The translations under genes and the position numbers were made by a program. Below the pieces are notes generated by a model that saw only the letters and a program-made list of their open reading frames with translations, was not told where the DNA came from and did not search any database. From Blepharisma stoltei ATCC 30299 (taxonomy: Eukaryota > Protista > Ciliophora): DNA of 64,000 bases. Positions 28,524-40,749 of this stretch are shown here, in pieces (position 1 is the stretch's first letter; the number at the start of each line of letters is the position of its first letter). The stretch spans positions 62,001 to 126,000 of the forward strand of contig CBFDEM010000019.1 in NCBI GenBank assembly GCA_965603825.1, in the 5' to 3' direction.

Positions 28524-29939
28524 ATGGCACTATCAGCTAGAGCAATTGAAGATTTTAAACAAACACTTATGAGTGAGCCTAGAAGTCGAGCGCAAATGAA
28601 TAAGCTGCGATTTTACGTAAAATCTATAGATATTTTAAAACCCCTACCACTAATTCAAAAAATTCAAGTAATTTTTACTCAGATGTGCAAATGTATGGAA
28701 TTATTTGAACACAAAAAAGGAAGCCAAATTATCTCTATTAAAGACAAAGTTTGAGATTTTTTTATGGTTTTGACTGGAAAAGTTGCCATAAGCAGCCCAG
28801 GACTATCACAATTAATAATCGAACCTATGAATATTTTTGGAAAAACAAACCCATTAGCTGAAGAAATCCATGGGAGAATCAATGCAGTTGCAGAAGAAAA
28901 TTCTTTTATTATAAAAATCCCAATTGAAAAATACATGAAAATTATGAGCGAATTTATTAGCTTTTTAGAAAAAAAGAAGTCTATAGAATTTATTGAAAAA
29001 TCAATACCAGGAGGGAAATTAATCAGTGAATCAGGCAAACAGAGAATTTTGAACCTTTTTACTGATGCAGAGTTTAAAAGTGGAGAAATTATTTTAAAAG
29101 AAGGCGAAATTCCAGGGTATTGCTTTATTATAAGAGAAGGAGAATGCAAACAAGTAAATTTAAGCGGGTCTAAAAAGCATCCATGAGGTTTTATGTCACG
29201 AACTATGAGCTGTTTTAATTATGATTTAGCTGTAGCTGGGGAATGAGTTGGAGAATCTTCTTTACTTTTCAATAAGCCTTTAGAGTTTTCTGTAATTGCT
29301 TCAACTTATGTAAAAGCGATGAAAATCACGTCACATGCACTGATTCATGGATTTCCAAAAATGACTATAAGTTTATTGAAAGAAAGTGTCGGTAATAAAG
29401 TCGACTGATGGACACATAGGAGAGAATCAATAATGTCAACTGTAAATAATGGACCTCTAAATGAAGGAAAAAAAGATATTGATGAAACTTTTATGAACAC
29501 TGAAAGAGGGTACCCAAAAGCAAGCAAAGCTGCTATTTCAAGCTTGAGAAGGCTTGATTTAGCAAAAACTGATTATAGACCTGAGTTGATGAATTCTAGG
29601 CCGAAAATAAGAAACTTAACACCAGTTTTGTATAGAAAAAATGAAGAAATAAATGAAGGCTGAAGGGTATGGAGTCCACCTAAGGCAAGGTCTTTTAAAT
29701 ATATAGAAAAGCCAAAGCCTGAAAAGAAAGCGAAAACTATATTGTGTTCTGGAGCTGCTGTAAGTAGTAATTTACTCCCGACTTATACACCTCCGAAAAG
29801 TAGGAAAGGCTCGTTAATAGACAAAGAAAGATCAAACTCAATCAGTATTGAGAACCGGACACATAGTCCTTATTTTCCTATCAGAGTTAAAAAAATACCG
29901 TCATTTTTTTTGAAGAAAATTGATATGAAAAATGATTAA
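28524..29939 (+). CDS. protein with two degenerate cyclic-nucleotide-binding domains, 471 aa
   Basis: Four ORFs joined by five TGA codons. FKSGEIILKEGEIPGYCFIIREGEC and GE-W-VGESSLLFNKPLEFSVIA. Confidence 0.8.
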
Positions 29940-30258
29940 TTGGACACACAAGCTATTTTCGTTGAATATTTAATGTAAAATAATACTTAAAATAGCTTCG
30001 AAACAGATTTTTTAAGGAAATAACCATTAATTTTTAGCCATTTCATTTTTCAGATTTTAATATTCTCTACAAAATCTGGATTTAGCTCTTTTTTTAGCTA
30101 AAATCTAATTATTAAAAATAAATATTTCTCAATAGAAAATATTTTTAAAAAATTACCTTCAATTTACTTAAAATGCTGCTTAAACAAAATCACCACAAAA
30201 CCGATTTATCCCAACCGAACCATCTTTATATTGTTCATAAAAATTACCAAATTATATA

Positions 30259-30909
30259 ATGACATCTGATCTAAACTCCATAAACATTCAAGCTTGCGTT
30301 ATCTCAAGCACAGAAGAATTGGATTGCTATAACTGGAAGCCTTTTATAGTATCTCCCCTCATAACCCTTATGGAGCTCAAATCTTTTTTACTCAATAGCC
30401 TAAGCATTTCTGAGGATTGTGACCTAAAAGTCCTTACAGAAATTCAGCAGGGCTCTTATTGCTTTCATTCCTTATCTGATAATCAATACCTTACATTAGA
30501 AAAAGCTGGCATCCAGAATAACACAAAACTGTGCCTAGAAATTAAAAAATGTGAAAATTATGCTGCGTTACGCATGAATGAGTTTTATAATGAAGCTCCT
30601 ATCGAAACTTTTATTGATATTTTAAACCAAAGTCAATCAGATTCCACAGAAATTGTATCAAGCTCGACTGAGGCGTATCCGGACCAAGAAGATTTTTATA
30701 TAACAAGATCGATGTATGAGCAGCAAAACTTTATAAATTCACAAGAGGAATGCTTGCGTAGACCAGACCTCAGCATTGTGATAGAACAAATCAATAATGC
30801 GTTGAAAGACAAAAATAAAATAAAATTGCAAATAAAGCCCTTATCAAGCTTAAAGAAAAGCATAAACCGAATTAGTGAAGAATTAAATGAGTTAAAAAAA
30901 GTGTGATAA
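30259..30909 (+). CDS. hypothetical protein with ubiquitin-like N-terminal region
   Basis: TLMELK...TLEKAGIQNNTKLCLE resembles a Ubl fold; ends GTG TGA TAA. Confidence 0.65.
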
Positions 30910-30917
30910 TAATTAAA

Positions 30918-32267
30918 TTACTGGTCTGAAAGCTTTCTGAACGATTTTATAGCTTTTTGTTGGAATTCTTTTGTGGACATTGGAAGATTCGGGATGTCGT
31001 CTTCTATTAGTTTTTCGATATCAATTTCATTGACATTAAGAGTCTGCTTAGAATTCGTAGATTCAGGCTGCTTTTCTATTGTAATGTTTCTCCAGTACAT
31101 CATAGAGTTAACTGACTCTTCTAGAGCAAACATAACTTTAGTGACAGTGTCTTCATCTAAATCTGGAAGATCTATTTCATGATTAATACCTAAATTTACC
31201 AGCGCATCAGTCATCATTTTAAACCCATCTGGCAAAAAAGTAATTTTTTCTCTTAATCCTTTTAGCTTGCCTGTGGCGATTTCTTTTTCTTTTCTCATCT
31301 TTTTCAAAGCTTCTTTGTGTCTTTCAATAATTTCAACTTTGGTTTCTTCACCGCTGCTTCTAGTAATTTCGTTGACTTTTTCTTTATTTTTAGTTACCTC
31401 TTCATTTATTTGGAAAATTTCTTCAGAAATTGTATATAGATAATGACTTAATTTTGAGTCCTCATTTACACTGCTTGTAAATAGCTCTACCAAATCTTTT
31501 AGACTAGTAAGCTTGCTTTGCCTCTTCATTTCTTCTAATGCAGAAGTTAATTCATGTATATGCGACCTTATTCTTTCTCTTTCAGCAGTCGTTTTCTCAC
31601 ATTTTGATGCCCATTTTTGGGACTGGGTTTTATAAATTGCATGCATTTCTGAAGCATCTGCTATAGGCTGCGCAAACTTCACAGTAAAGCCTTGCCTGAA
31701 TTTTGTCCCTTCAAATCTGTCTTCTATTAAATTAGTCTTCAGTAAGCTTACACTTTGGGCTAAAATGTCTCGATTGCTTTCAAATCTGCTGTGAGTGCTC
31801 ATAATATTCTCATTATATTTTTCAACTGTTTTTTGGAGCTCAGCTGATTCTTTGTTAGTCTCTATAATTTGTGATCTAGCCCTTTCCAATTCTCTTTTTG
31901 CGCTTATATTTCCAGTCGCGAAGCTATAAGAAGCTCTTCTCATGTTATTAATTTCTATCACAAGCTTTTTAGCTTGTCCTCTAACTTCTCCAAGCTGCTT
32001 ATTCGCTGCGTCTAATCTGACCTCTAACGCTTTTACCTTTTCTTGTGCTCTGGAACTGTTGGACTTCGGATTTCTGCTTTTTTTAACATTTGCTATATTT
32101 TGCTTGATTTCTTTTAAATCTTTGTCAAGCAACAATGATAATCTTCGCTCATGCTCCAGGTACCGGGTAAAATTATTGATCTCATTTTCTAGTCTTACTG
32201 TTTCTCTTCCAAAGGTAAAAATACCTGATTTCTTTGAAACGTTTGACGGGGAGGTTCGTGCAGACAT
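30918..32267 (-). CDS. coiled-coil protein resembling outer dynein arm docking complex subunit (CCDC114/ODAD1-like)
   Basis: Long coiled coil with SLKDLVELFTSSVNEDSKLSHYLYTISEEI, similar to the conserved ODA-DC segment. Confidence 0.55.
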   Translation of the reverse strand: MSARTSPSNVSKKSGIFTFGRETVRLENEINNFTRYLEHERRLSLLLDKDLKEIKQNIANVKKSRNPKSNSSRAQEKVKALEVRLDAANKQLGEVRGQAKKLVIEINNMRRASYSFATGNISAKRELERARSQIIETNKESAELQKTVEKYNENIMSTHSRFESNRDILAQSVSLLKTNLIEDRFEGTKFRQGFTVKFAQPIADASEMHAIYKTQSQKWASKCEKTTAERERIRSHIHELTSALEEMKRQSKLTSLKDLVELFTSSVNEDSKLSHYLYTISEEIFQINEEVTKNKEKVNEITRSSGEETKVEIIERHKEALKKMRKEKEIATGKLKGLREKITFLPDGFKMMTDALVNLGINHEIDLPDLDEDTVTKVMFALEESVNSMMYWRNITIEKQPESTNSKQTLNVNEIDIEKLIEDDIPNLPMSTKEFQQKAIKSFRKLSDQ

Positions 32268-32303
32268 AGATCGGTTTTATTATGAAAATGGCTTTATTAG
32301 TTT

Positions 32304-35300
32304 TTATGAAATATAAGGGATTAAGAAATCTTTTGTCTTCAGTTTATGAGATTCTTCTAAATTTACGTGCACGCTAAAGCTTTCAATAGTCTTGAACTGG
32401 ATCATGCATATGCTGCAGTAAGAAGAAATTTCCATATATTTAGCCTTACTTGCATATTCCTCAGCCAGAATATATAGTTTTTCCATATCATTATTTCATA
32501 GTTCAGGATTTCAATCAACTCTATATAAAGTTGGAAAAAGAACAGCGACTGGAGATTTCTCAGAAAAAATATAATGATCTCTTTCAACCCAGCCTATTGT
32601 ATGTCCACGTGCGCAGACAACCCACCTTTCTGGGTCATATTTTTGGGAAATTTCGTTGACTAAATCATCATCATTTACAGTATCAACTTCATTTAGCCCA
32701 GAGTATCCAGTAACCATGAATAAATTTTCTTTGTTAAATTGTTTTACACACTGATATGAACAAATTGTACTGCTACATACAGCACATACAAATTCAGCTT
32801 GCCTCAATGCTGCGATTTTCCCATTTTTCTCGATATCAGCGATTAGCAGTTCTTTTTTATAATGAATTTCTGATAAATCATTTGAAAATAGCTCCTCACT
32901 ATTTGGCTGCCAATGTCTAGGGTCTTCATCAATAGGAAGAGGCTTAATTGCTGGCAAATACCCATTATAAGAGTTATCAATTTCAAAATCCTCAAATTTG
33001 TGAGGATTTTCAATAGTTTTATTCCAATTTATCAGTTTTTTCCAATTAGGAAGTTCCCTTTCTATTCTAATTCTGTCTGCTTTTAACAGCTTTTTAATAT
33101 TATTTCTGATATTATTTGACAACTCACTGTGCTTTATATATTTATCATCAAAAATCAAAATACTGATTTCTTTTCTGATTTCATTGATAATTTCTACATC
33201 ATATCCAGTGAATTCAAAATCAAACAATATTTTATTGACGCTGTTATGGACTCGAAAAGAGTCATATCGTGTATTTTTATCATCTGCAAAAAATTCAGCA
33301 TTTGGAGAAAATATCAAGGTCAAAATTTGAGGCAGGTTTGGGTATTCTGGCATTATTGTCGAATTTCTTGCAATAGTAAAATTTCTTTTCTCCACGTATT
33401 CACAGCAAACTGCCATTTTTCTATCTGCTCGTTTTTCATCTCTGCATATGCAGACAGCATTTATTGAGTCTTCTTCTATTTTTATGGAATATCTTGTCAT
33501 CACATCAAAAAATCTCAACTTATAAGGATATTCTGGCCTCTCTAAAAATGCGATTTCTGTAGCTTTTACACAATCTCTGTACTGGTTTTCATTGATTTTT
33601 ATGATGTTTTCTCTTTTATATGAAGCTGCGAAGTTTCTTTTGCTGATCCTTAAGGCTTCTTGCATTTTAGAATCTGCGTATCGGGATGGATATGCTTCCC
33701 AAAGCTCTCCAGTTTCAGGGTTTCTGACAGTATCCATAGAAACAAGCCAAGCTAAATTATTGTATCTTTGGTAATAGCTACCGAGCCATAATACATATTT
33801 CAGGGTACGATCTCTTACGTTTTTTTTATATGTAATTACAGCGCTGGAATGGCTCATAAAAATTCTTTCAGGGCTCTCACTATTTCCTTTTATTAAATTT
33901 TCTATTTCAACTTGGGTTATGAAGTCTGGAATGTCAGGAATCATAATAGAGGTTTCACAATTTTTCCCGATCTTTTGGCACAGTTTTTCTCTTGTGAAGG
34001 CTTCATCAATTTCATATTTAGAAAGCAAATATTTTCCACTATATGCGGCAGCTATACAGAGCTTTATACGGAAAACTTCTTCACTTGCGGGGCTTCTTTT
34101 TTCAACACAATCTTGGTCATATTGAAAATGCCGCTTATCTATTTTTCGTTCTTCAAATCTTTTTTCGAGCTCTTTATAATTATTTAAATTTTCACGGAGA
34201 GCATTTGGGTCCAAGCAATTATTTCTGCAAAATTCTTTTTCTTCAAGAGTCACTGGGGGTTTTCTTAAATTTCGACCGTTTCTAAACATAATTTTTTCGA
34301 CTTCGTAGCCAAACTCTCTGTACCATATATCGTAAGCATTTAAGTAGCTGATTAAATCACTGTTACAGCCATTGTCAAAATTATATCTTGCTTGGTAGGT
34401 TTCTGGGTGTTTTTTTGAAAATTTAGAAGGTAAGTTAGCGAGATGCTGCAATGGTGGCCTTTCTAATGATAAAATGGCACCGATTACCATGGAGTCTCGA
34501 AAGCAGCCAAAAATCAGCCCAAACATGCATAAGCGTGTAACTCTTATATCATAGGGCATATCTGCATATAATTTTCCTAATGGGGTGATATTTTTTTTGG
34601 AATCTAGCCCTCCCATTTCTTGCAAATATTTTTCAGTTTTGGCAATTTCTGCTTCATCAGGAGGCTGTAGGGCTTTCCCAAGGACATCTCTTGGATTACC
34701 GAAATTTAATTGTTTTAATTTTAAAACTAGCTTGTCAAGTGAGCATCTTTGGATTTCAGGTTTTGCGTAGTCATAAAGTTTAAAATTGAAAAATCCTTCA
34801 GGCATTAGTCGAAAAACAACACCATCAGCAACTCTGCCAACTCTTCCAGCTCTTTGTTTCATAACAGATTTTGCTGCCCAGACAAGCTCTAAGTTATCAG
34901 CCATTGTATTTGAATTGAATGCATTTTGCCTTAAAAATCCAAAATCAATTATAAATCTTACGTCAATAAGTGTCACTGAGCTTTCGGCGATGTTTGTTGA
35001 TAAAATTATTCTTCTTTTATCAGGAGAAGGAAGCTCTAGCACTTTTTCATGTTGTTCTTCAGGAATTGAACTATGAAGTATGCAGATATCTAGCTCGTAG
35101 AAAATATCCTCGCAAATGTCTTCTAGCTTATCATACATATAATTAATTTCTTGAATTCCTGGAAGAAAAACCAAAAATGTGCTAAGTCTTTCTTCTGGTT
35201 TAAATTTTATTAAATGCTGATATTTTATTGTATATGCTGCAATATCAAAAATAATATTATCAACTTCTTCAACCTTTGTATCTGAGTCTTCAATGAATAA

Positions 35301-36329
35301 AGTATTTATGTAATTTCTATCATATTTTCCTTCAGCTCTAAAGTTATTTCTATCAATTGCATCTATAAGCTCATCTATATAAATTAGATCTACTTTAAAT
35401 AGACGAGAATCAGTTGATAAGGAATCAATTTTGTCAGCGCGGTCTTTTTCAAATCTGTTTTCTATACGAGCGATGTTTGATTTATAGCTACTTGCAGGTG
35501 TTGGATTATTAACCCAACTATTATTTCATACGTCCTCAGGGCTTGTTCAGCTGTTTTCATTCTGATTTGATAATTTCTCAATTTTCTCTTCTTCTCATTC
35601 TTCACTATCAGTAGAAAAATCTGTATTTTCTAGCTTGCTAAGCTCAGTTGGTGCAAAATAATTTCCAATAATTTTCTCCATAGTAGCCGACATCAAAATC
35701 AGCTTAAAATTTGATTTTTTTGCTAACAAATATTTGAAAATAACCAGCAAAAAATCTGTTTCTATAGACCTTTCATGCACTTCATCCATAACTACAAAGT
35801 TTCATGGTATTTTGTGCTCTTTAATAGTTTCACATCCACAAAGCTCCTGGACGAGCATTCCTGTTGTCATGTATATAATCCTTGAATTCTCATTATATTT
35901 TTTAATTCCTTTAATATGATATCCAACAACTTCACCTATTTCTGTCTCCATTTCTTCAGCAACTCGTGTAGCAATTTGTATCGTAGGAAGCCTCCTTGGC
36001 TGAGAAATTACAATTTTACTATCTGGCCATCTTTCAAGGATATATTTAGGAACTTGTGTAGTTTTTCCACTACCAGTTGCGCCTTCAATTATTCCTACAT
36101 TAAATTGATTGAGCTGCTTCAGGATTTTTTCTTTATGCCTAAATATCGGTAGCTCCTCTGGATCAGGGATTCCTTCGCTTAATTTCTCATAATTCAATTT
36201 TTTTGGGTATCTTGGCTGGTCATTTCACTCTGAGTTTCTTCTCGGAGGTCCACCTCTTCCTCTACTAAAGCCCCCACGAGAGCCTCTTCGCTGATATCTA
36301 TTAGGCTGGTTTCAATGACTTCGATCCAT
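32304..36329 (-). CDS. DEAH/RHA RNA helicase, Spindle-E/TDRD9-like, 1341 aa, with C-terminal Zn modules
   Basis: ATG 36329. ORFs 35802..36197, 35595..35789, 32511..35174 and 32304..32486 share one frame joined by TGAs. GATGSGKTT, DEVHER, MSAT, VFLPG, STNIAESSVT, QRAGRVGR, then HA2 region. Confidence 0.9.
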
Positions 36330-36447
36330 ATTTATGATATTGCGTATGTTCTTACTAGATATCTAAGTAAAGATAGTGCCAAAATAATAAATTCGGGAAT
36401 TAATAAATATTTTAAGTTATATGCAACCAAGATCTGTTGAAATATAA

Positions 36448-37488
36448 ATGGATCCACGAGATCATAACGATTTTAATGAAGAGAAAAAAACTGAGCACTG
36501 AAACAAATATCAAATACTCGAACAAATAGCAGTAGGCAGCTTTGGAGTAGTTTTCAAAGCAATAAATACAGAAACAAGAGAGCTAGTAGCTATTAAAAAA
36601 ATTCAGCAGGATCCAAGATACAAAACTAAAGAGCTTAAAATTTTACAAAGAATGCGACATCCTAATATAGTTAACTTGAAAAGTTCGGTTTATAGCAAAG
36701 AAGAAGAGGAGTACCTTAATTTAGTTATGGATTATTACCCAGAAACTATTGCAACACCTATAGCAAATTCTTCCTCAAATGGAAAAATCCCTGAAATTCT
36801 TGTAAAGCTTTATATCTATCAGCTACTCCGAGCTTTAGCCCATATGCATGCTTTAAGAATTTGCCATCGGGATGTGAAGCCTTTAAATTTACTTTTAGAC
36901 CCTAAAAGCCATATAGTCAGTCTATGTGATTTTGGGAGCGCAAAAAGGCTTAAGCCAAATGAGTCAAACGTTTCTTATATTTGTTCGAGATATTATAGAG
37001 CTCCTGAGCTGATTTTTGGGTCGACTAGTTATACTGAAAAAGTTGATATCTGAAGTGTTGGGTGCATAGCTGCAGAACTTCTGCTTGGGCATGCAATTTT
37101 TGCAGGGGAAAGTAGAATAGCGCAGCTGATCGAAATTGTAAAAGTGCTTGGAACTCCTTCAAGAGAACAAATACATGAGCTGAATCCTGAGTACGACCAG
37201 TACAGATTTCCTTATGTAAAGGTTATCCCACTCAATAAAACTCTTCAAGGATCTTCTAAAAATGCTATTGACTTTATAAGCGGAATTTTGCAGTATTCTC
37301 CAAATTCGAGACCAAAGGCTTTAGAAGCACTAATTCATCCATTTTTTGATGAACTGAAAAACCAAGGTATAAGATTACCGAATGGAAACCCAGCACCTGA
37401 TCTTTTTAATTGGACTAATGAAGAAAGATCCTCAGTGAGTGTTGATATTATAGAACGATTAACGCCCGGATGGTATAGAAACAATTAA
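36448..37488 (+). CDS. GSK3: GSK3/shaggy-like kinase, copy 1
   Basis: ATG 36448; CHRDVKP, CDFGSAK, NVSYICSRYYRAPEL; VDI-W(TGA 37051)-SVGC. Confidence 0.93.
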
Positions 37489-37659
37489 TTTTATTTTAAT
37501 ATCCATTCTTTTCCATATTTTTTAGCATAAACAAATTATTCTAAATGATTTCATATGCATCAATCCTCAAATTATTCTACTTTATTGCATCTTTTACTTA
37601 TGCTAATTCATAAAATCATTAAAATATCTAATCAAGTGAAACGTTTATTAATAATAATT

Positions 37660-38724
37660 ATGGAGGTAACCACAGAGCAAAGGAACTTCAACATGGAAGA
37701 GCTAAAAATCGACCAGTGACACAAATACCAAATCGTCGACCAAATTGCTGTTGGGACTTTTGGTGTTGTTTATAAAGCCATAAATCGAGAAAATAGTGAA
37801 CTTGTTGCAATTAAAAAAATTCGTCAAGACCCGAGATACCAAAACCGTGAATTAGAAATCATGCGGCTTCTTACCCATGATAACATCATTACTTTACGAA
37901 ATGCTTTCTTAAGCAAGGAAGGGACTGATAGAGAATATTTAAACGTTGTAATGGACTATTTTCCGGAAACCATTCTTAAACCGATTCAAAACTCATTGAA
38001 AAAAGGAAGAAAAATCCCTGAATTAGTATCAAAGCTGTATATGTATCAGCTGCTCAGAGCACTAGGGCACATGCACTCCCTAGGGATTTGTCATAGAGAT
38101 GTAAAACCGTTAAATATTTTGCTTGACTCCAAAACTCACATTGTAAGCTTATGTGACCTTGGAAGCTCTAAAAGGCTTATTCGCGGTGAAGCAAATATCG
38201 CTTATATATGTTCACGATATTATAGAGCTCCTGAGCTTATTTTCGGGTCAACTAGATACTCAGAGTCGATTGACATATGGAGCGCTGGGTGTATAGCTGC
38301 TGAACTTTTAATAGGAAAAATGCTATTTGTGGGGAGCACAAGGATTACCCAGCTGATAGAGATTATTAAAATTATGGGAACTCCTTCAAGAGAAGAAATT
38401 TATGAAATGAATCCTAAATACAGAGAATATAAATTCCCATTTGTAAAAGTGGTCCCACTTTTTAGGATTCTTGATGGCGCTTCTAAAAATGCAATTGATT
38501 TTGTATCAAGTTTACTGCAGTATTCGCCTAGTGCAAGACCTAAAGCATTAGAGGCATTGCTACACCCTTGATTTGATGAATTGAGAAACCAAAATTGTAG
38601 GCTGCCGAGTGGGAATCCCCTGCCTGATATTTTTAACTGGACAAATGAAGAAAGAAATTCTGTGAGCCCTGATGTTATTGAGAGATTGACTCCAAGCTGG
38701 TATCGTATTGACCCTAGTAACTAA
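37660..38724 (+). CDS. GSK3: GSK3/shaggy-like kinase, copy 2 (DLG in place of DFG)
   Basis: ATG 37660; NIAYICSRYYRAPEL; HP-W(TGA 38569)-FDEL; TAA 38722-38724. Colinear with copy 1. Confidence 0.93.
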
Positions 38725-39627
38725 TAATTACAAAAATAATTTTCATATATTAATTATTTTTATATACAAATTTTATAAAATATGATAAAAATGATTATTA
38801 TTTTAAGTCCTAAGCTAAAAATATCAATTAATTATTAGAATAAAATCATATGCTAAAATTTCTATAAGGATATAATATATGGTGAATTTTTTATATTTTT
38901 AAAGCACAAATTAAAGAAATAATATTTATAATCTTTAAAAGCCCTTAGCAATACTGCAGCAGGAATTTCACTGTATTACCCAAACATTTCCTATATTTTT
39001 CAAGTTAGAATCCAATTTATCAAATATTCTACTCTTTTCCATATTTTTACTAAAAATTCCAAACCCTAGATTAAGTATAATAATATTTTGACAATTTGAT
39101 TTTGGCATTTCCATTCTGTAAATCCAAGGAGCAATCTCTGAGACAAATGCTATTGAAAAAGTAGCAAATAGCCTATCAATCTTCAATATAGCTATTAATT
39201 TTCTATTAAATACAGTATGAGGGACTTAATTCTTCACCAGCAATTCTTAATTAATGGATTTCTGTTTGCTATATATTGAAAACCAAGTCTTCAATAGGAA
39301 AACACATATTGGGTAAAAGCAGAAGTAATCTATAAAAATTGAATTTCATAAATCAATTATCGTTTTTAACCTAATTCAATTATTATAATAAATGTCAAAA
39401 TGTCAAAATTATTGCAAATAAAAATGATTGAGCTATTATGTTTCATTAATTCAATATTTAGACTCGTATAATAAAAAACTGCCAATTAATCTTTGAACAA
39501 TCAAATAATTTAAAATACATTTTATATTTTATAGAAGACAATGCTTAAGTGAGATTATTTTAATTAACGGAGAATATTAATTAATTTAAAAAGGCAATTT
39601 AAATTATTGAACTATTATAATTTACTA

Positions 39628-40749
39628 TTAGCCTTTACGTGAAACTGGTTCATCATATTCAACCCTCGAGTCGTCTGTAGAATTAGGGATGTCTTCGTTA
39701 TAGTAATAATCAGCAAAAAGTGACTGAGTAATTTCATCTTTCAGTAGCGTTTTGCAACGAATAAACGATTCATTATTCACATCTCTATTGTACGAAATTT
39801 CTAAATTCTTTCTAAAATTCGCTGAGGTGGCTTTCGGAATATATGGAGCTTTTAATGCCCCATTTTCGAGTTTTACTCAGTCAATATCGGAAAACCATGG
39901 ATGCTTTTTTACTTCATTTGCCCCATGATATCCAAGCCTATTTCTTGGATTCTTCTGTATAAGCTGTATATAAATTACCTTGTTTACTAAATCAAGAATG
40001 TCGCTTGATCAACCTTTTGGAAGATCACTTTCTTTTAGTTTGATTTCTTCTTTCATTTTCAATGAAATTTCTCTTCGATTAGCACCTTCATAAGGCCTTT
40101 CCCCGGTTATCAATTCATAAAGAATGATTCCGAGGGAATAATAATCGGTCGCAATCGTTTGTTGTTCATAAGAAATCATTTCTGGGGATATATAGCCAAT
40201 TGTGCCTTCAATATGGTTGGCATTTTGATCCAAAATATTAATAGCTGTTCCAAAGTCTGATAAATGGAGATATCCATTACTGTCGAATAATAAGTTTTCA
40301 GGCTTTAAATCTCTATGGATAATATTCATCCCATGAATATATTCTAAGCTTCTTATTATGCAACAAATTCAAAATTTTACTACTTTTTCCGAAATAGCTT
40401 TTTTTTGAGCCAAATAAAATCTCAGATCTCCACCAAGCATTAAATCTAATACTAAATATAAAAACTGGCTATCAGAAAATGCATAATGCATGCTCACAAT
40501 AGTTGGGCTATGAAGTGTGCTTAAAATTTTTTCCTCATTCAGCACATCATCTATGCTCCTCTTAGCCAAAATTTTTGCCTTTGACATGACTTTTACCGCA
40601 AATTCTGTATTTGATTTCGTGTGAAGAGCTTTTCAGACTTTTCCAAACGCTCCTTTGCCAATTACATAATTCAATTGAAATTGGCTTCTAGAGACTGTTA
40701 AAGGTCCGTCATTTGGCTCTTCATGAGGGCTTCTACAACAATTTCCCAT
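39628..40749 (-). CDS. AGC kinase (YANK/STK32-like), copy 1, MGNCC acylation motif, one 15-nt intron
   Basis: ATG 40749; GKGAFGKV-W(TGA)-KA, LDLMLGGDLRF, HRDLKPEN, DFG; TAA 39628-39630. Confidence 0.9.
39964..39978 (-). other. 15-nt in-frame intron GTAATTTATATACAG
   Basis: Removal gives DLVNKLIQKNP, matching the intronless paralog DFVNKLLEKDP; A10. Confidence 0.88.

What the first reader, a model, noticed from the sequence alone, without database searches (positions are those of the whole stretch)
32304..36329. Spindle-E/TDRD9-like helicase with an RGG tail, RIG-I-CTD-like Zn module and matrin Zn finger but no Tudor domain: candidate small-RNA genome-editing or RNA-sensing factor
Seen: the full 1341-aa protein appears only with TGA=Trp. 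Post-helicase blocks follow the TDRD9/Spindle-E pattern (LELVWAAK..KQRAGRVGRV; PEIQRCSL...NPRDVLGKALQPP; LGKLYADMP...GLIFGC; ARYNF...SDLISYLNAYDIW). The N-terminus is RRGSRGGFSRGRGG. The C-terminus carries FVCAVCSSTIC-(about 45 aa)-WVVCARGHTIGW (about 32540-32795), then C-x2-C-x12-H-x6-H (CSICMIQFKTIESFSVHVNLEESHK). Known: Spindle-E/TDRD9 act in the piRNA pathway; a DExH helicase (Ema1p) is needed for scnRNA-guided DNA elimination in Tetrahymena; RIG-I-like CTDs bind RNA ends. Inference: this may be a heterotrich scnRNA-pathway helicase that recognises RNA ends through a domain combination I do not recognise from described proteins.
Basis: partly seen in the sequence, partly recalled or inferred. 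Interest (0 to 1): 0.8.

Follow-up and report, generated by a model that had tools for sequence, protein, structure and literature searches.

The report
Protist Spindle-E helicase without Tudor domain
This ciliate gene is a relative of Spindle-E/TDRD9, the helicase animals use to silence transposons, and like its relatives in many ciliates and an amoeba it lacks the animal Tudor domain and carries a zinc domain folded like the RIG-I tip, which suggests that this part of the small-RNA machinery is older than animals.

Summary
In detail: a 1341-aa reading frame with 8 TGA=Trp codons and intact DExH motifs. It is almost certainly Blepharisma stoltei BSTOLATCC_MAC7973, already auto-labelled TDRD9.

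Family: it groups with animal TDRD9/Spindle-E (SH-aLRT 99) and is colinear with silkworm Spindle-E except for the Tudor insert.

C-terminus: the module folds confidently (pLDDT 97) as a beta-tent zinc domain (RIG-I/MDA5/LGP2 CTD Z about 8; Mis18 7.2), followed by a JAZ/matrin-type finger.

- The architecture is not heterotrich-specific. It occurs in spirotrichs, other ciliate-like lineages and Entamoeba.
- Tent and Tudor never co-occur (88 versus 150 proteins).
- The finger is shared with invertebrate Spindle-E.
- The RGG tail is not conserved.
- The tent is acidic with no conserved basic residues, so RIG-I-like RNA-end sensing is unsupported.

Expression: this copy rises only about 2.7-fold over a long-gene background at 2-6 h of conjugation. 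Its paralogue (MAC15942, noted earlier by this scan on other DNA) tracks the developmental Piwi (r=0.95) and is the better scnRNA-helicase candidate. Orthology to Ema1p could not be tested.

Verdict: new variant of a known kind.

The parts
32304..36329 (-). Whole CDS, 1341 aa, code 4, no intron needed; equals database protein P0001; probably BSTOLATCC_MAC7973 (Contig_26.g67)
   Evidence: same 4026-bp length, matching domain list, contig rank 19; the same mapping correctly predicted the paralogue's entry
36249..36290 (-). Short RG/RGG-rich N-terminal stretch (aa 14-27); not conserved, absent from the Stentor orthologue
35652..36158 (-). RecA1 (aa 58-226): motifs I, Ia, Ib, DEVH and SAT intact
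35430..35651 (-). Acidic, Trp-dotted insertion after motif III (about aa 227-300), typical of tent-bearing members; the stretch to motif IV is about 50 aa longer than in animals
34770..35189 (-). RecA2 (aa 381-520): motifs IV, V and VI intact
34125..34769 (-). Winged-helix/ratchet (HA2) region (aa 521-735) of Spindle-E type
33720..34079 (-). Region colinear with silkworm Spindle-E 735-828 (RRM-like in TDRD9 from knowledge; only a weak RRM hit here). The animal Tudor insert, Spindle-E 829-1106, is missing right after it
33060..33584 (-). Spindle-E-specific post-Tudor block (about aa 916-1090; OB-like by position); significant PDB match only to Spindle-E 1107-1329
   Evidence: (E 2e-11)
32505..32804 (-). 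Beta-tent zinc domain (aa 1176-1275), predicted ligands C1182, C1185, C1239, H1243; acidic
32346..32417 (-). C2H2 finger of JAZ/matrin type (C1305, C1308, H1321, H1328), homologous to the C-terminal finger of invertebrate Spindle-E/TDRD9
36047..36048 (.). Site of a 297-bp germline-limited insertion (degenerate MITE copy) at codon 94
35184..35185 (.). Site of an 83-bp germline-limited insertion at codon 382
34266..34267 (.). Site of a 529-bp germline-limited insertion holding a MITE copy, codon 688

Best explanation
It is one of two Blepharisma copies of the protist form of the TDRD9/Spindle-E DEAH/RHA helicase. SHOWN: family placement, intact ATPase motifs, the Tudor-less architecture ending in a tent and a finger, purifying selection, and a modest expression peak at pair formation and early meiosis. 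INFERRED from animal Spindle-E and ciliate Ema1 biology: it is recruited to a Piwi-small RNA complex engaged on a target transcript and uses ATP to translocate on or remodel that RNA. The acidic tent domain acts as a protein-docking or structural module, in place of the Tudor domain that animal members use for this (from knowledge), and not as a 5'-triphosphate sensor. This copy would be the minor, early-acting paralogue; the C40 paralogue would do the bulk scnRNA work.
For: Best PDB match is Spindle-E at 196 bits against 147 for DHX29; with a protist profile, 481 against 305 and 296 for DHX29 and DHX36. The post-HA2 profile hits only Spindle-E significantly. In the tree, ciliate-type members (99) are sister to animal TDRD9/Spn-E (98; joint node only 84), Entamoeba lies outside, and the whole family has SH-aLRT 99 against DHX9/29-like, spliceosomal and bacterial helicases. 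Tent and Tudor are mutually exclusive. The tent is acidic with no conserved basic column. Published RPKM: 0.4, 1.4, 1.1 before mixing; 20.6 at 2 h; 14.1 at 6 h; 2.7-9.1 later; meiosis starts about 2 h after pairing. Tandem CHHC-finger (Gtsf1-like) genes are in the genome. Silkworm Spindle-E joins a Siwi-piRNA-target-GTSF1-Maelstrom complex (PDB 9nhs title; PMC13523842), and Paramecium Ema1 co-purifies with Ptiwi09 and Gtsf1 (PMC11724296).
Against: There are no interaction or knockdown data for this protein. Long genes in that dataset all rise about 8-fold at 2 h; the corrected excess is only about 2.7-fold at 2-6 h and none later, and the correlation with Piwi MAC5406 is -0.45 (background is 15 long genes with similar 26-h fold, a biased sample). 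No Tetrahymena or Paramecium member was identified. No Maelstrom was detected (its control also failed). The tree is the quick IQ-TREE search without bootstrap and has no named DHX36, DHX57 or YTHDC2 rows.
Confidence: 0.55

Rival explanations
1. One reading: the tent is a true RLR-type sensor that recognises RNA ends (5'-triphosphate or blunt duplex) and, with the JAZ-like finger, loads the helicase on small-RNA duplexes.
For: The top eight VIA-align hits are all RLR or DRH CTDs (Z 7.2-8.2, 90-99 aligned residues against 79-84 for Mis18). The tent profile's only PDB hits are RIG-I and MDA5 (E 0.5-3.7, not significant). The finger's best match is a dsRNA-binding ZFa finger (E 1e-5).
Against: Net negative charge and no conserved Lys/Arg in the tent, whereas RLR CTDs use a basic cleft (knowledge). 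Foldseek ranks Mis18, YPEL5 and cereblon first. Z differences under 1 are ties. The fourth zinc ligand is His, not Cys.
Confidence: 0.15
2. This particular copy is the functional Ema1 equivalent for scnRNA selection and IES elimination in Blepharisma.
For: Early conjugation peak, like the early-peak class of Paramecium PTMB.220/EMA1 (PMC3091696). The Stylonychia member carries the GenBank name 'nucleic acid helicase', which from memory is also the Ema1 annotation.
Against: The paralogue MAC15942 reaches 221 RPKM, is 53-fold up at 26 h and tracks Piwi (r 0.95); this copy returns to background when the new macronucleus forms.
Confidence: 0.15
3. The copy has drifted to a Piwi-independent job, such as general or meiotic mRNP remodelling, and its apparent induction is mostly the length-related trend of the RNA-seq series.
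For: Low RPKM; little excess over background except at 2-6 h; heterotrich-clade members form several old sublineages.
Against: The 6 h/14 h ratio of 3.8 exceeds all 15 comparison genes (0.5-1.6); every characterised family member acts with Piwi proteins (PMC4232550, PMC11094040).
Confidence: 0.15

Closest known systems
Spindle-E (Bombyx, PDB 9nhs_G; Drosophila) and animal TDRD9
   Same: DExH core, HA2, post-HA2 blocks colinear (Spn-E 369-828 and 1107-1329), and a C-terminal C2H2 finger (Spn-E about 1400-1439)
   Different: No Tudor insert (Spn-E 829-1106); a beta-tent zinc domain before the finger; an acidic Trp-dotted insertion after motif III. Some ant Spn-E records also lack Tudor but have no tent
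Ema1p (Tetrahymena) and Ema1a/b = PTMB.220 (Paramecium)
   Same: Ciliate putative RNA helicases, induced early in sexual development, Piwi-associated (PMC11724296, PMC8191774, PMC3091696)
   Different: Sequence not retrieved, so orthology and domain architecture are untested; this copy is weakly induced compared with its paralogue
RIG-I/MDA5/LGP2 and C. elegans DRH-1/DRH-3 C-terminal domains
   Same: Beta-tent fold, Z about 8, rmsd 3-4 A over about 95 residues; C-terminal to an SF2 helicase
   Different: A different helicase family (DEAH/RHA); CCCH ligands; acidic, with no conserved basic residues
Mis18/Yippee (YPEL5), cereblon CULT, MsrB
   Same: Same fold (Z 5.3-7.2; Foldseek top ranks)
   Different: Not fused to helicases; no significant sequence match except a weak MsrB hit (E 0.007)

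Membership tests
TDRD9/Spindle-E helicases | DEAH/RHA core that groups with TDRD9/Spn-E | tested here: met
   SH-aLRT 99, quick tree, DHX36/57/YTHDC2 compared only by HMM score
TDRD9/Spindle-E helicases | Family-specific post-HA2 block | tested here: met
   E 2e-11 to Spindle-E only; colinear
TDRD9/Spindle-E helicases | Tudor domain (defines the animal form) | tested here: not met
   so filed as the protist sister form, not as a Tudor-domain protein
TDRD9/Spindle-E helicases | C-terminal C2H2 finger (invertebrate members) | tested here: met
   73 of 150 Tudor-bearing members score on the protist finger HMM
TDRD9/Spindle-E helicases | Acts with PIWI proteins in small-RNA silencing | not testable with these tools
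   only expression timing available
Ema1p orthologues | Reciprocal best match or clade with Tetrahymena Ema1p / Paramecium PTMB.220 | tested here: inconclusive
   no named oligohymenophorean protein among the listed hits; original papers not held
Ema1p orthologues | Strong conjugation-specific co-expression with the scnRNA Piwi | tested here: not met
   r -0.45 for this copy; met by the paralogue, r 0.95
RLR C-terminal RNA-sensing domain (PF11648) | Beta-tent zinc fold | tested here: met
RLR C-terminal RNA-sensing domain (PF11648) | Score above the Pfam cut-off | tested here: not met
   no hit for the query; best homologue E 0.04
RLR C-terminal RNA-sensing domain (PF11648) | Conserved basic RNA-binding cleft | tested here: not met
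   net charge -5, no Lys/Arg column at 45% or more inside the tent; sequence-level test, surface not computed
JAZ/matrin (U1-like) C2H2 finger | C-x2-C-x12-H-x5/6-H followed by a helix | tested here: met
   profile hits ZFa, Snu23, ZNF346, ZMAT2; JAZ structure Z 4.0; the query alone is below Pfam cut-offs
DHX36/DHX29/DHX9 or spliceosomal DEAH helicases | Core groups with them; standard OB_NTP_bind end | tested here: not met

The most novel reading that the evidence does not exclude
Spindle-E/TDRD9 dates to an early eukaryote, where it ended in a beta-tent domain plus finger; animals gained Tudor and lost the tent. Ciliate Ema1 belongs to this lineage, so Piwi-Gtsf1-Spindle-E is one conserved module behind both animal piRNA silencing and ciliate DNA elimination, and the tent is an undescribed functional module for Piwi-complex docking or RNA binding.
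Probability: 0.4. Interest if true: 0.75.

Novelty: new variant of a known kind. Interest (0 to 1): 0.5.

Why it matters
Spindle-E/TDRD9 is treated as an animal germline factor, and no paper in the searched library links it to ciliate Ema1 or describes this domain (key older papers were not held). A protist form with a tent domain instead of Tudor would date the helicase arm of the Piwi pathway to before animals. It also gives a named structural model (PDB 9nhs) for how ciliate scnRNA helicases could work, and a small, well-folded domain that can be assayed directly. For Blepharisma it names two knockdown candidates and says which is more likely to matter.

Tried and rejected
- Single-sequence folding of the C-terminus failed (pLDDT 32); a 68-sequence alignment solved it.
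- Pfam alone does not name the tent.
- ESM Atlas feature search gave only a sub-threshold DHX34 lead; Atlas fold search returned beta-tent families at TM under 0.5.
- Ema1p and PTMB.220 sequences were not retrieved by three word searches, one full HMMER search (150 of 411 hits shown) or a metagenome scan; Aronica 2008, Nowak 2011 and De 2025 were not held.
- Maelstrom and RIG-I_C-RD family searches of the genome were blank, but so were the controls.
- The careful tree did not finish in two runs.
- Read depth from contigs cannot rank expression.
- Rejected: frameshift or pseudogene, intron artefact, heterotrich-only architecture, RGG as a family feature, and the 9.6-fold value at 26 h as evidence of a genome-editing role.

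Full report
Observation. The minus-strand frame 36329..32304 is open for 1341 codons only if TGA is read as Trp (8 codons). The same protein is in public databases (P0001). Relatives that use the standard code have Trp at several of these positions. Contigs of four probable RNA runs lie on the gene with no skips or indels, and their variants are enriched for synonymous changes, 24 of 39 codons against 20% expected.

Identity. The gene lies on contig 19 of a 41.5-Mb, 64-contig genome. The Blepharisma stoltei genome paper lists BSTOLATCC_MAC7973 (Contig_26.g67) with a 4026-bp CDS, a matching Pfam list and the eggNOG label TDRD9 (10.1101/2021.12.14.471607, Data S3). Contig_26 is 19th in text order. 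The same rule predicted that the paralogue found on contig 40 (3825-bp CDS) would be on Contig_45, and it is (MAC15942, labelled spn-E). The identification is therefore an inference, but a strong one. The family label was already attached automatically; searches of the paper and its held supplements found no discussion of the gene.

Family. The best solved relative is silkworm Spindle-E. A profile of protist members aligns to Spindle-E 369-828, skips 829-1106 (the Tudor region), resumes at 1107-1329 and weakly picks up the finger at 1400-1439; it scores 481 bits against 305 for DHX29 and 296 for DHX36. The post-HA2 part alone matches only Spindle-E significantly. In a core tree, ciliate-type proteins form a clade (99) next to animal TDRD9/Spn-E (98), with Entamoeba marina and one unnamed protein outside, and the family has SH-aLRT 99. 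This was a quick search without bootstrap. The outgroup was bacterial Hrp proteins, two eukaryotic RHA-type proteins and eight Blepharisma DEAH reading frames, each used as a single open frame with no spliced models joined; three further Blepharisma fragments were left out. Entamoeba is a long branch.

The C-terminus. A profile search of 1.84 billion representatives gave about 70 homologous modules. With them AlphaFold gave pLDDT 96.6. Foldseek returns Mis18, YPEL5, cereblon, RIG-I and DRH-3. VIA-align ranks LGP2, MDA5, DRH-1 and RIG-I CTDs first (Z 7.2-8.2), then Mis18 (7.2), MsrB and cereblon. These Z values are middling, but the list is one fold family and the zinc ligands fit. The function is not shown: the domain has net charge -5 (median -3 in 68 homologues) and no conserved Lys or Arg column, unlike the basic RNA cleft of RLRs (knowledge). 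The final finger is of JAZ/matrin type and is homologous to the finger at the end of invertebrate Spindle-E/TDRD9, which is already described in Drosophila, where mutating it has a mild effect (PMC4232550).

Distribution. The architecture is in Stentor (OMJ88539.1), Stylonychia (CDW71563.1), Euplotes (CAI2359838.1), many nanochromosomes with C4A4 telomeres and TAA/TAG read-through, AT-rich standard-code contigs and Entamoeba marina (KAL7713033.1). Most metagenomic members are unnamed, so their class is inferred. Among 252 family proteins of 1000 aa or more, some of them near-duplicates, 88 have the tent and none of these has Tudor; 150 have Tudor and none has the tent. These are essentially two lineages, so the exclusivity reflects one split and not repeated swaps. 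A tent in both ciliates and an amoebozoan suggests that it is ancestral and that Tudor is an animal gain; that order is inferred. The RGG tail is in 4 of 30 members of the Blepharisma-containing clade and absent from the Stentor orthologue.

Expression. Published RPKM go from about 1 to 20.6 at 2 h and 14.1 at 6 h, fall to 2.7 at 18 h, and reach 9.1 at 26 h. Long genes of unrelated function listed beside it show the same 8-10-fold rise. Against that background this gene is about 2.7-fold up at 2-6 h and flat afterwards, while the paralogue is 5-17-fold up from 6 h on and follows the developmental Piwi (r 0.95 against -0.45). The comparison set is small and was selected by similar 26-h fold.

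Mechanism. Most likely it is an ATP-driven remodeller of Piwi-small RNA-target complexes, by analogy with Spindle-E (PMC11094040; PDB 9nhs) and with ciliate Ema1, which associates with Piwi and Gtsf1 and is needed for Piwi to stay on chromatin (PMC11724296). This copy would act early and at low level. The tent is more likely a docking module than an RNA-end sensor. None of this is shown for this protein, and Ema1 orthology is untested because its sequence was not retrieved.

Germline copy. In assembly GCA_914767885.1 the CDS is interrupted by three insertions of 297, 83 and 529 bp; two contain copies of a roughly 390-bp inverted-repeat element. The germline version hits a stop at codon 116, so the gene needs DNA excision in each new macronucleus. 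This is common in the region: 14 insertions in 15 kb.

Verdict. Real, in a known family, with a domain architecture I found undescribed in the searched literature but shared across protists. New variant of a known kind; interest 0.5.

Noticed in passing
G000:C40:161668-165525 (L018): Paralogue, 1274 aa, 36% identical, same tent and finger; MAC15942, peaks at 221 RPKM at 6 h and tracks Piwi MAC5406. Better candidate for the scnRNA helicase.
   Followed up: partly
window 35430-35651: Acidic insertion with several Trp between RecA1 and RecA2, typical of tent-bearing members (mean 1.3-1.4 Trp against 0.17 in animals); could be a Piwi hook replacing Tudor contacts. Speculative.
   Followed up: partly
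L001 (germline copy of window 28971-39754): 14 germline-limited insertions in 15 kb; the 391-bp one at window 38947 has long terminal inverted repeats and is related to two insertions inside the helicase gene (a MITE family; BogoMITE from memory).
   Followed up: partly
window 36448-38724 (+): Tandem similar protein kinases (GSK3-like by motif, 74-80% DNA identity in patches) lie head-to-head with the helicase; the first starts within about 120-150 bp of the helicase start codon.
   Followed up: no
window 30918-32267 (-): 449-aa coiled-coil-looking ORF without a Pfam match starts 37 bp after the helicase stop; it looks like an outer-dynein-arm docking protein (impression only).
   Followed up: no
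P0272 (KAL7713033.1): Entamoeba marina has a TDRD9-family helicase with tent and finger; a candidate for its small-RNA pathway.
   Followed up: partly
P0011, P0012, P0459, P0463, P0466, P0474: Several ant Spindle-E records of about 1200 aa lack the Tudor domain; real loss, isoform or annotation artefact not checked.
   Followed up: no
L036-L043: Several genes with tandem CHHC fingers (Gtsf1-like) in the Blepharisma genome.
   Followed up: no
Data S3 of 10.1101/2021.12.14.471607: Long genes rise 8-10-fold from 0 h to 2 h regardless of function, so moderate fold values in that table need caution.
   Followed up: partly
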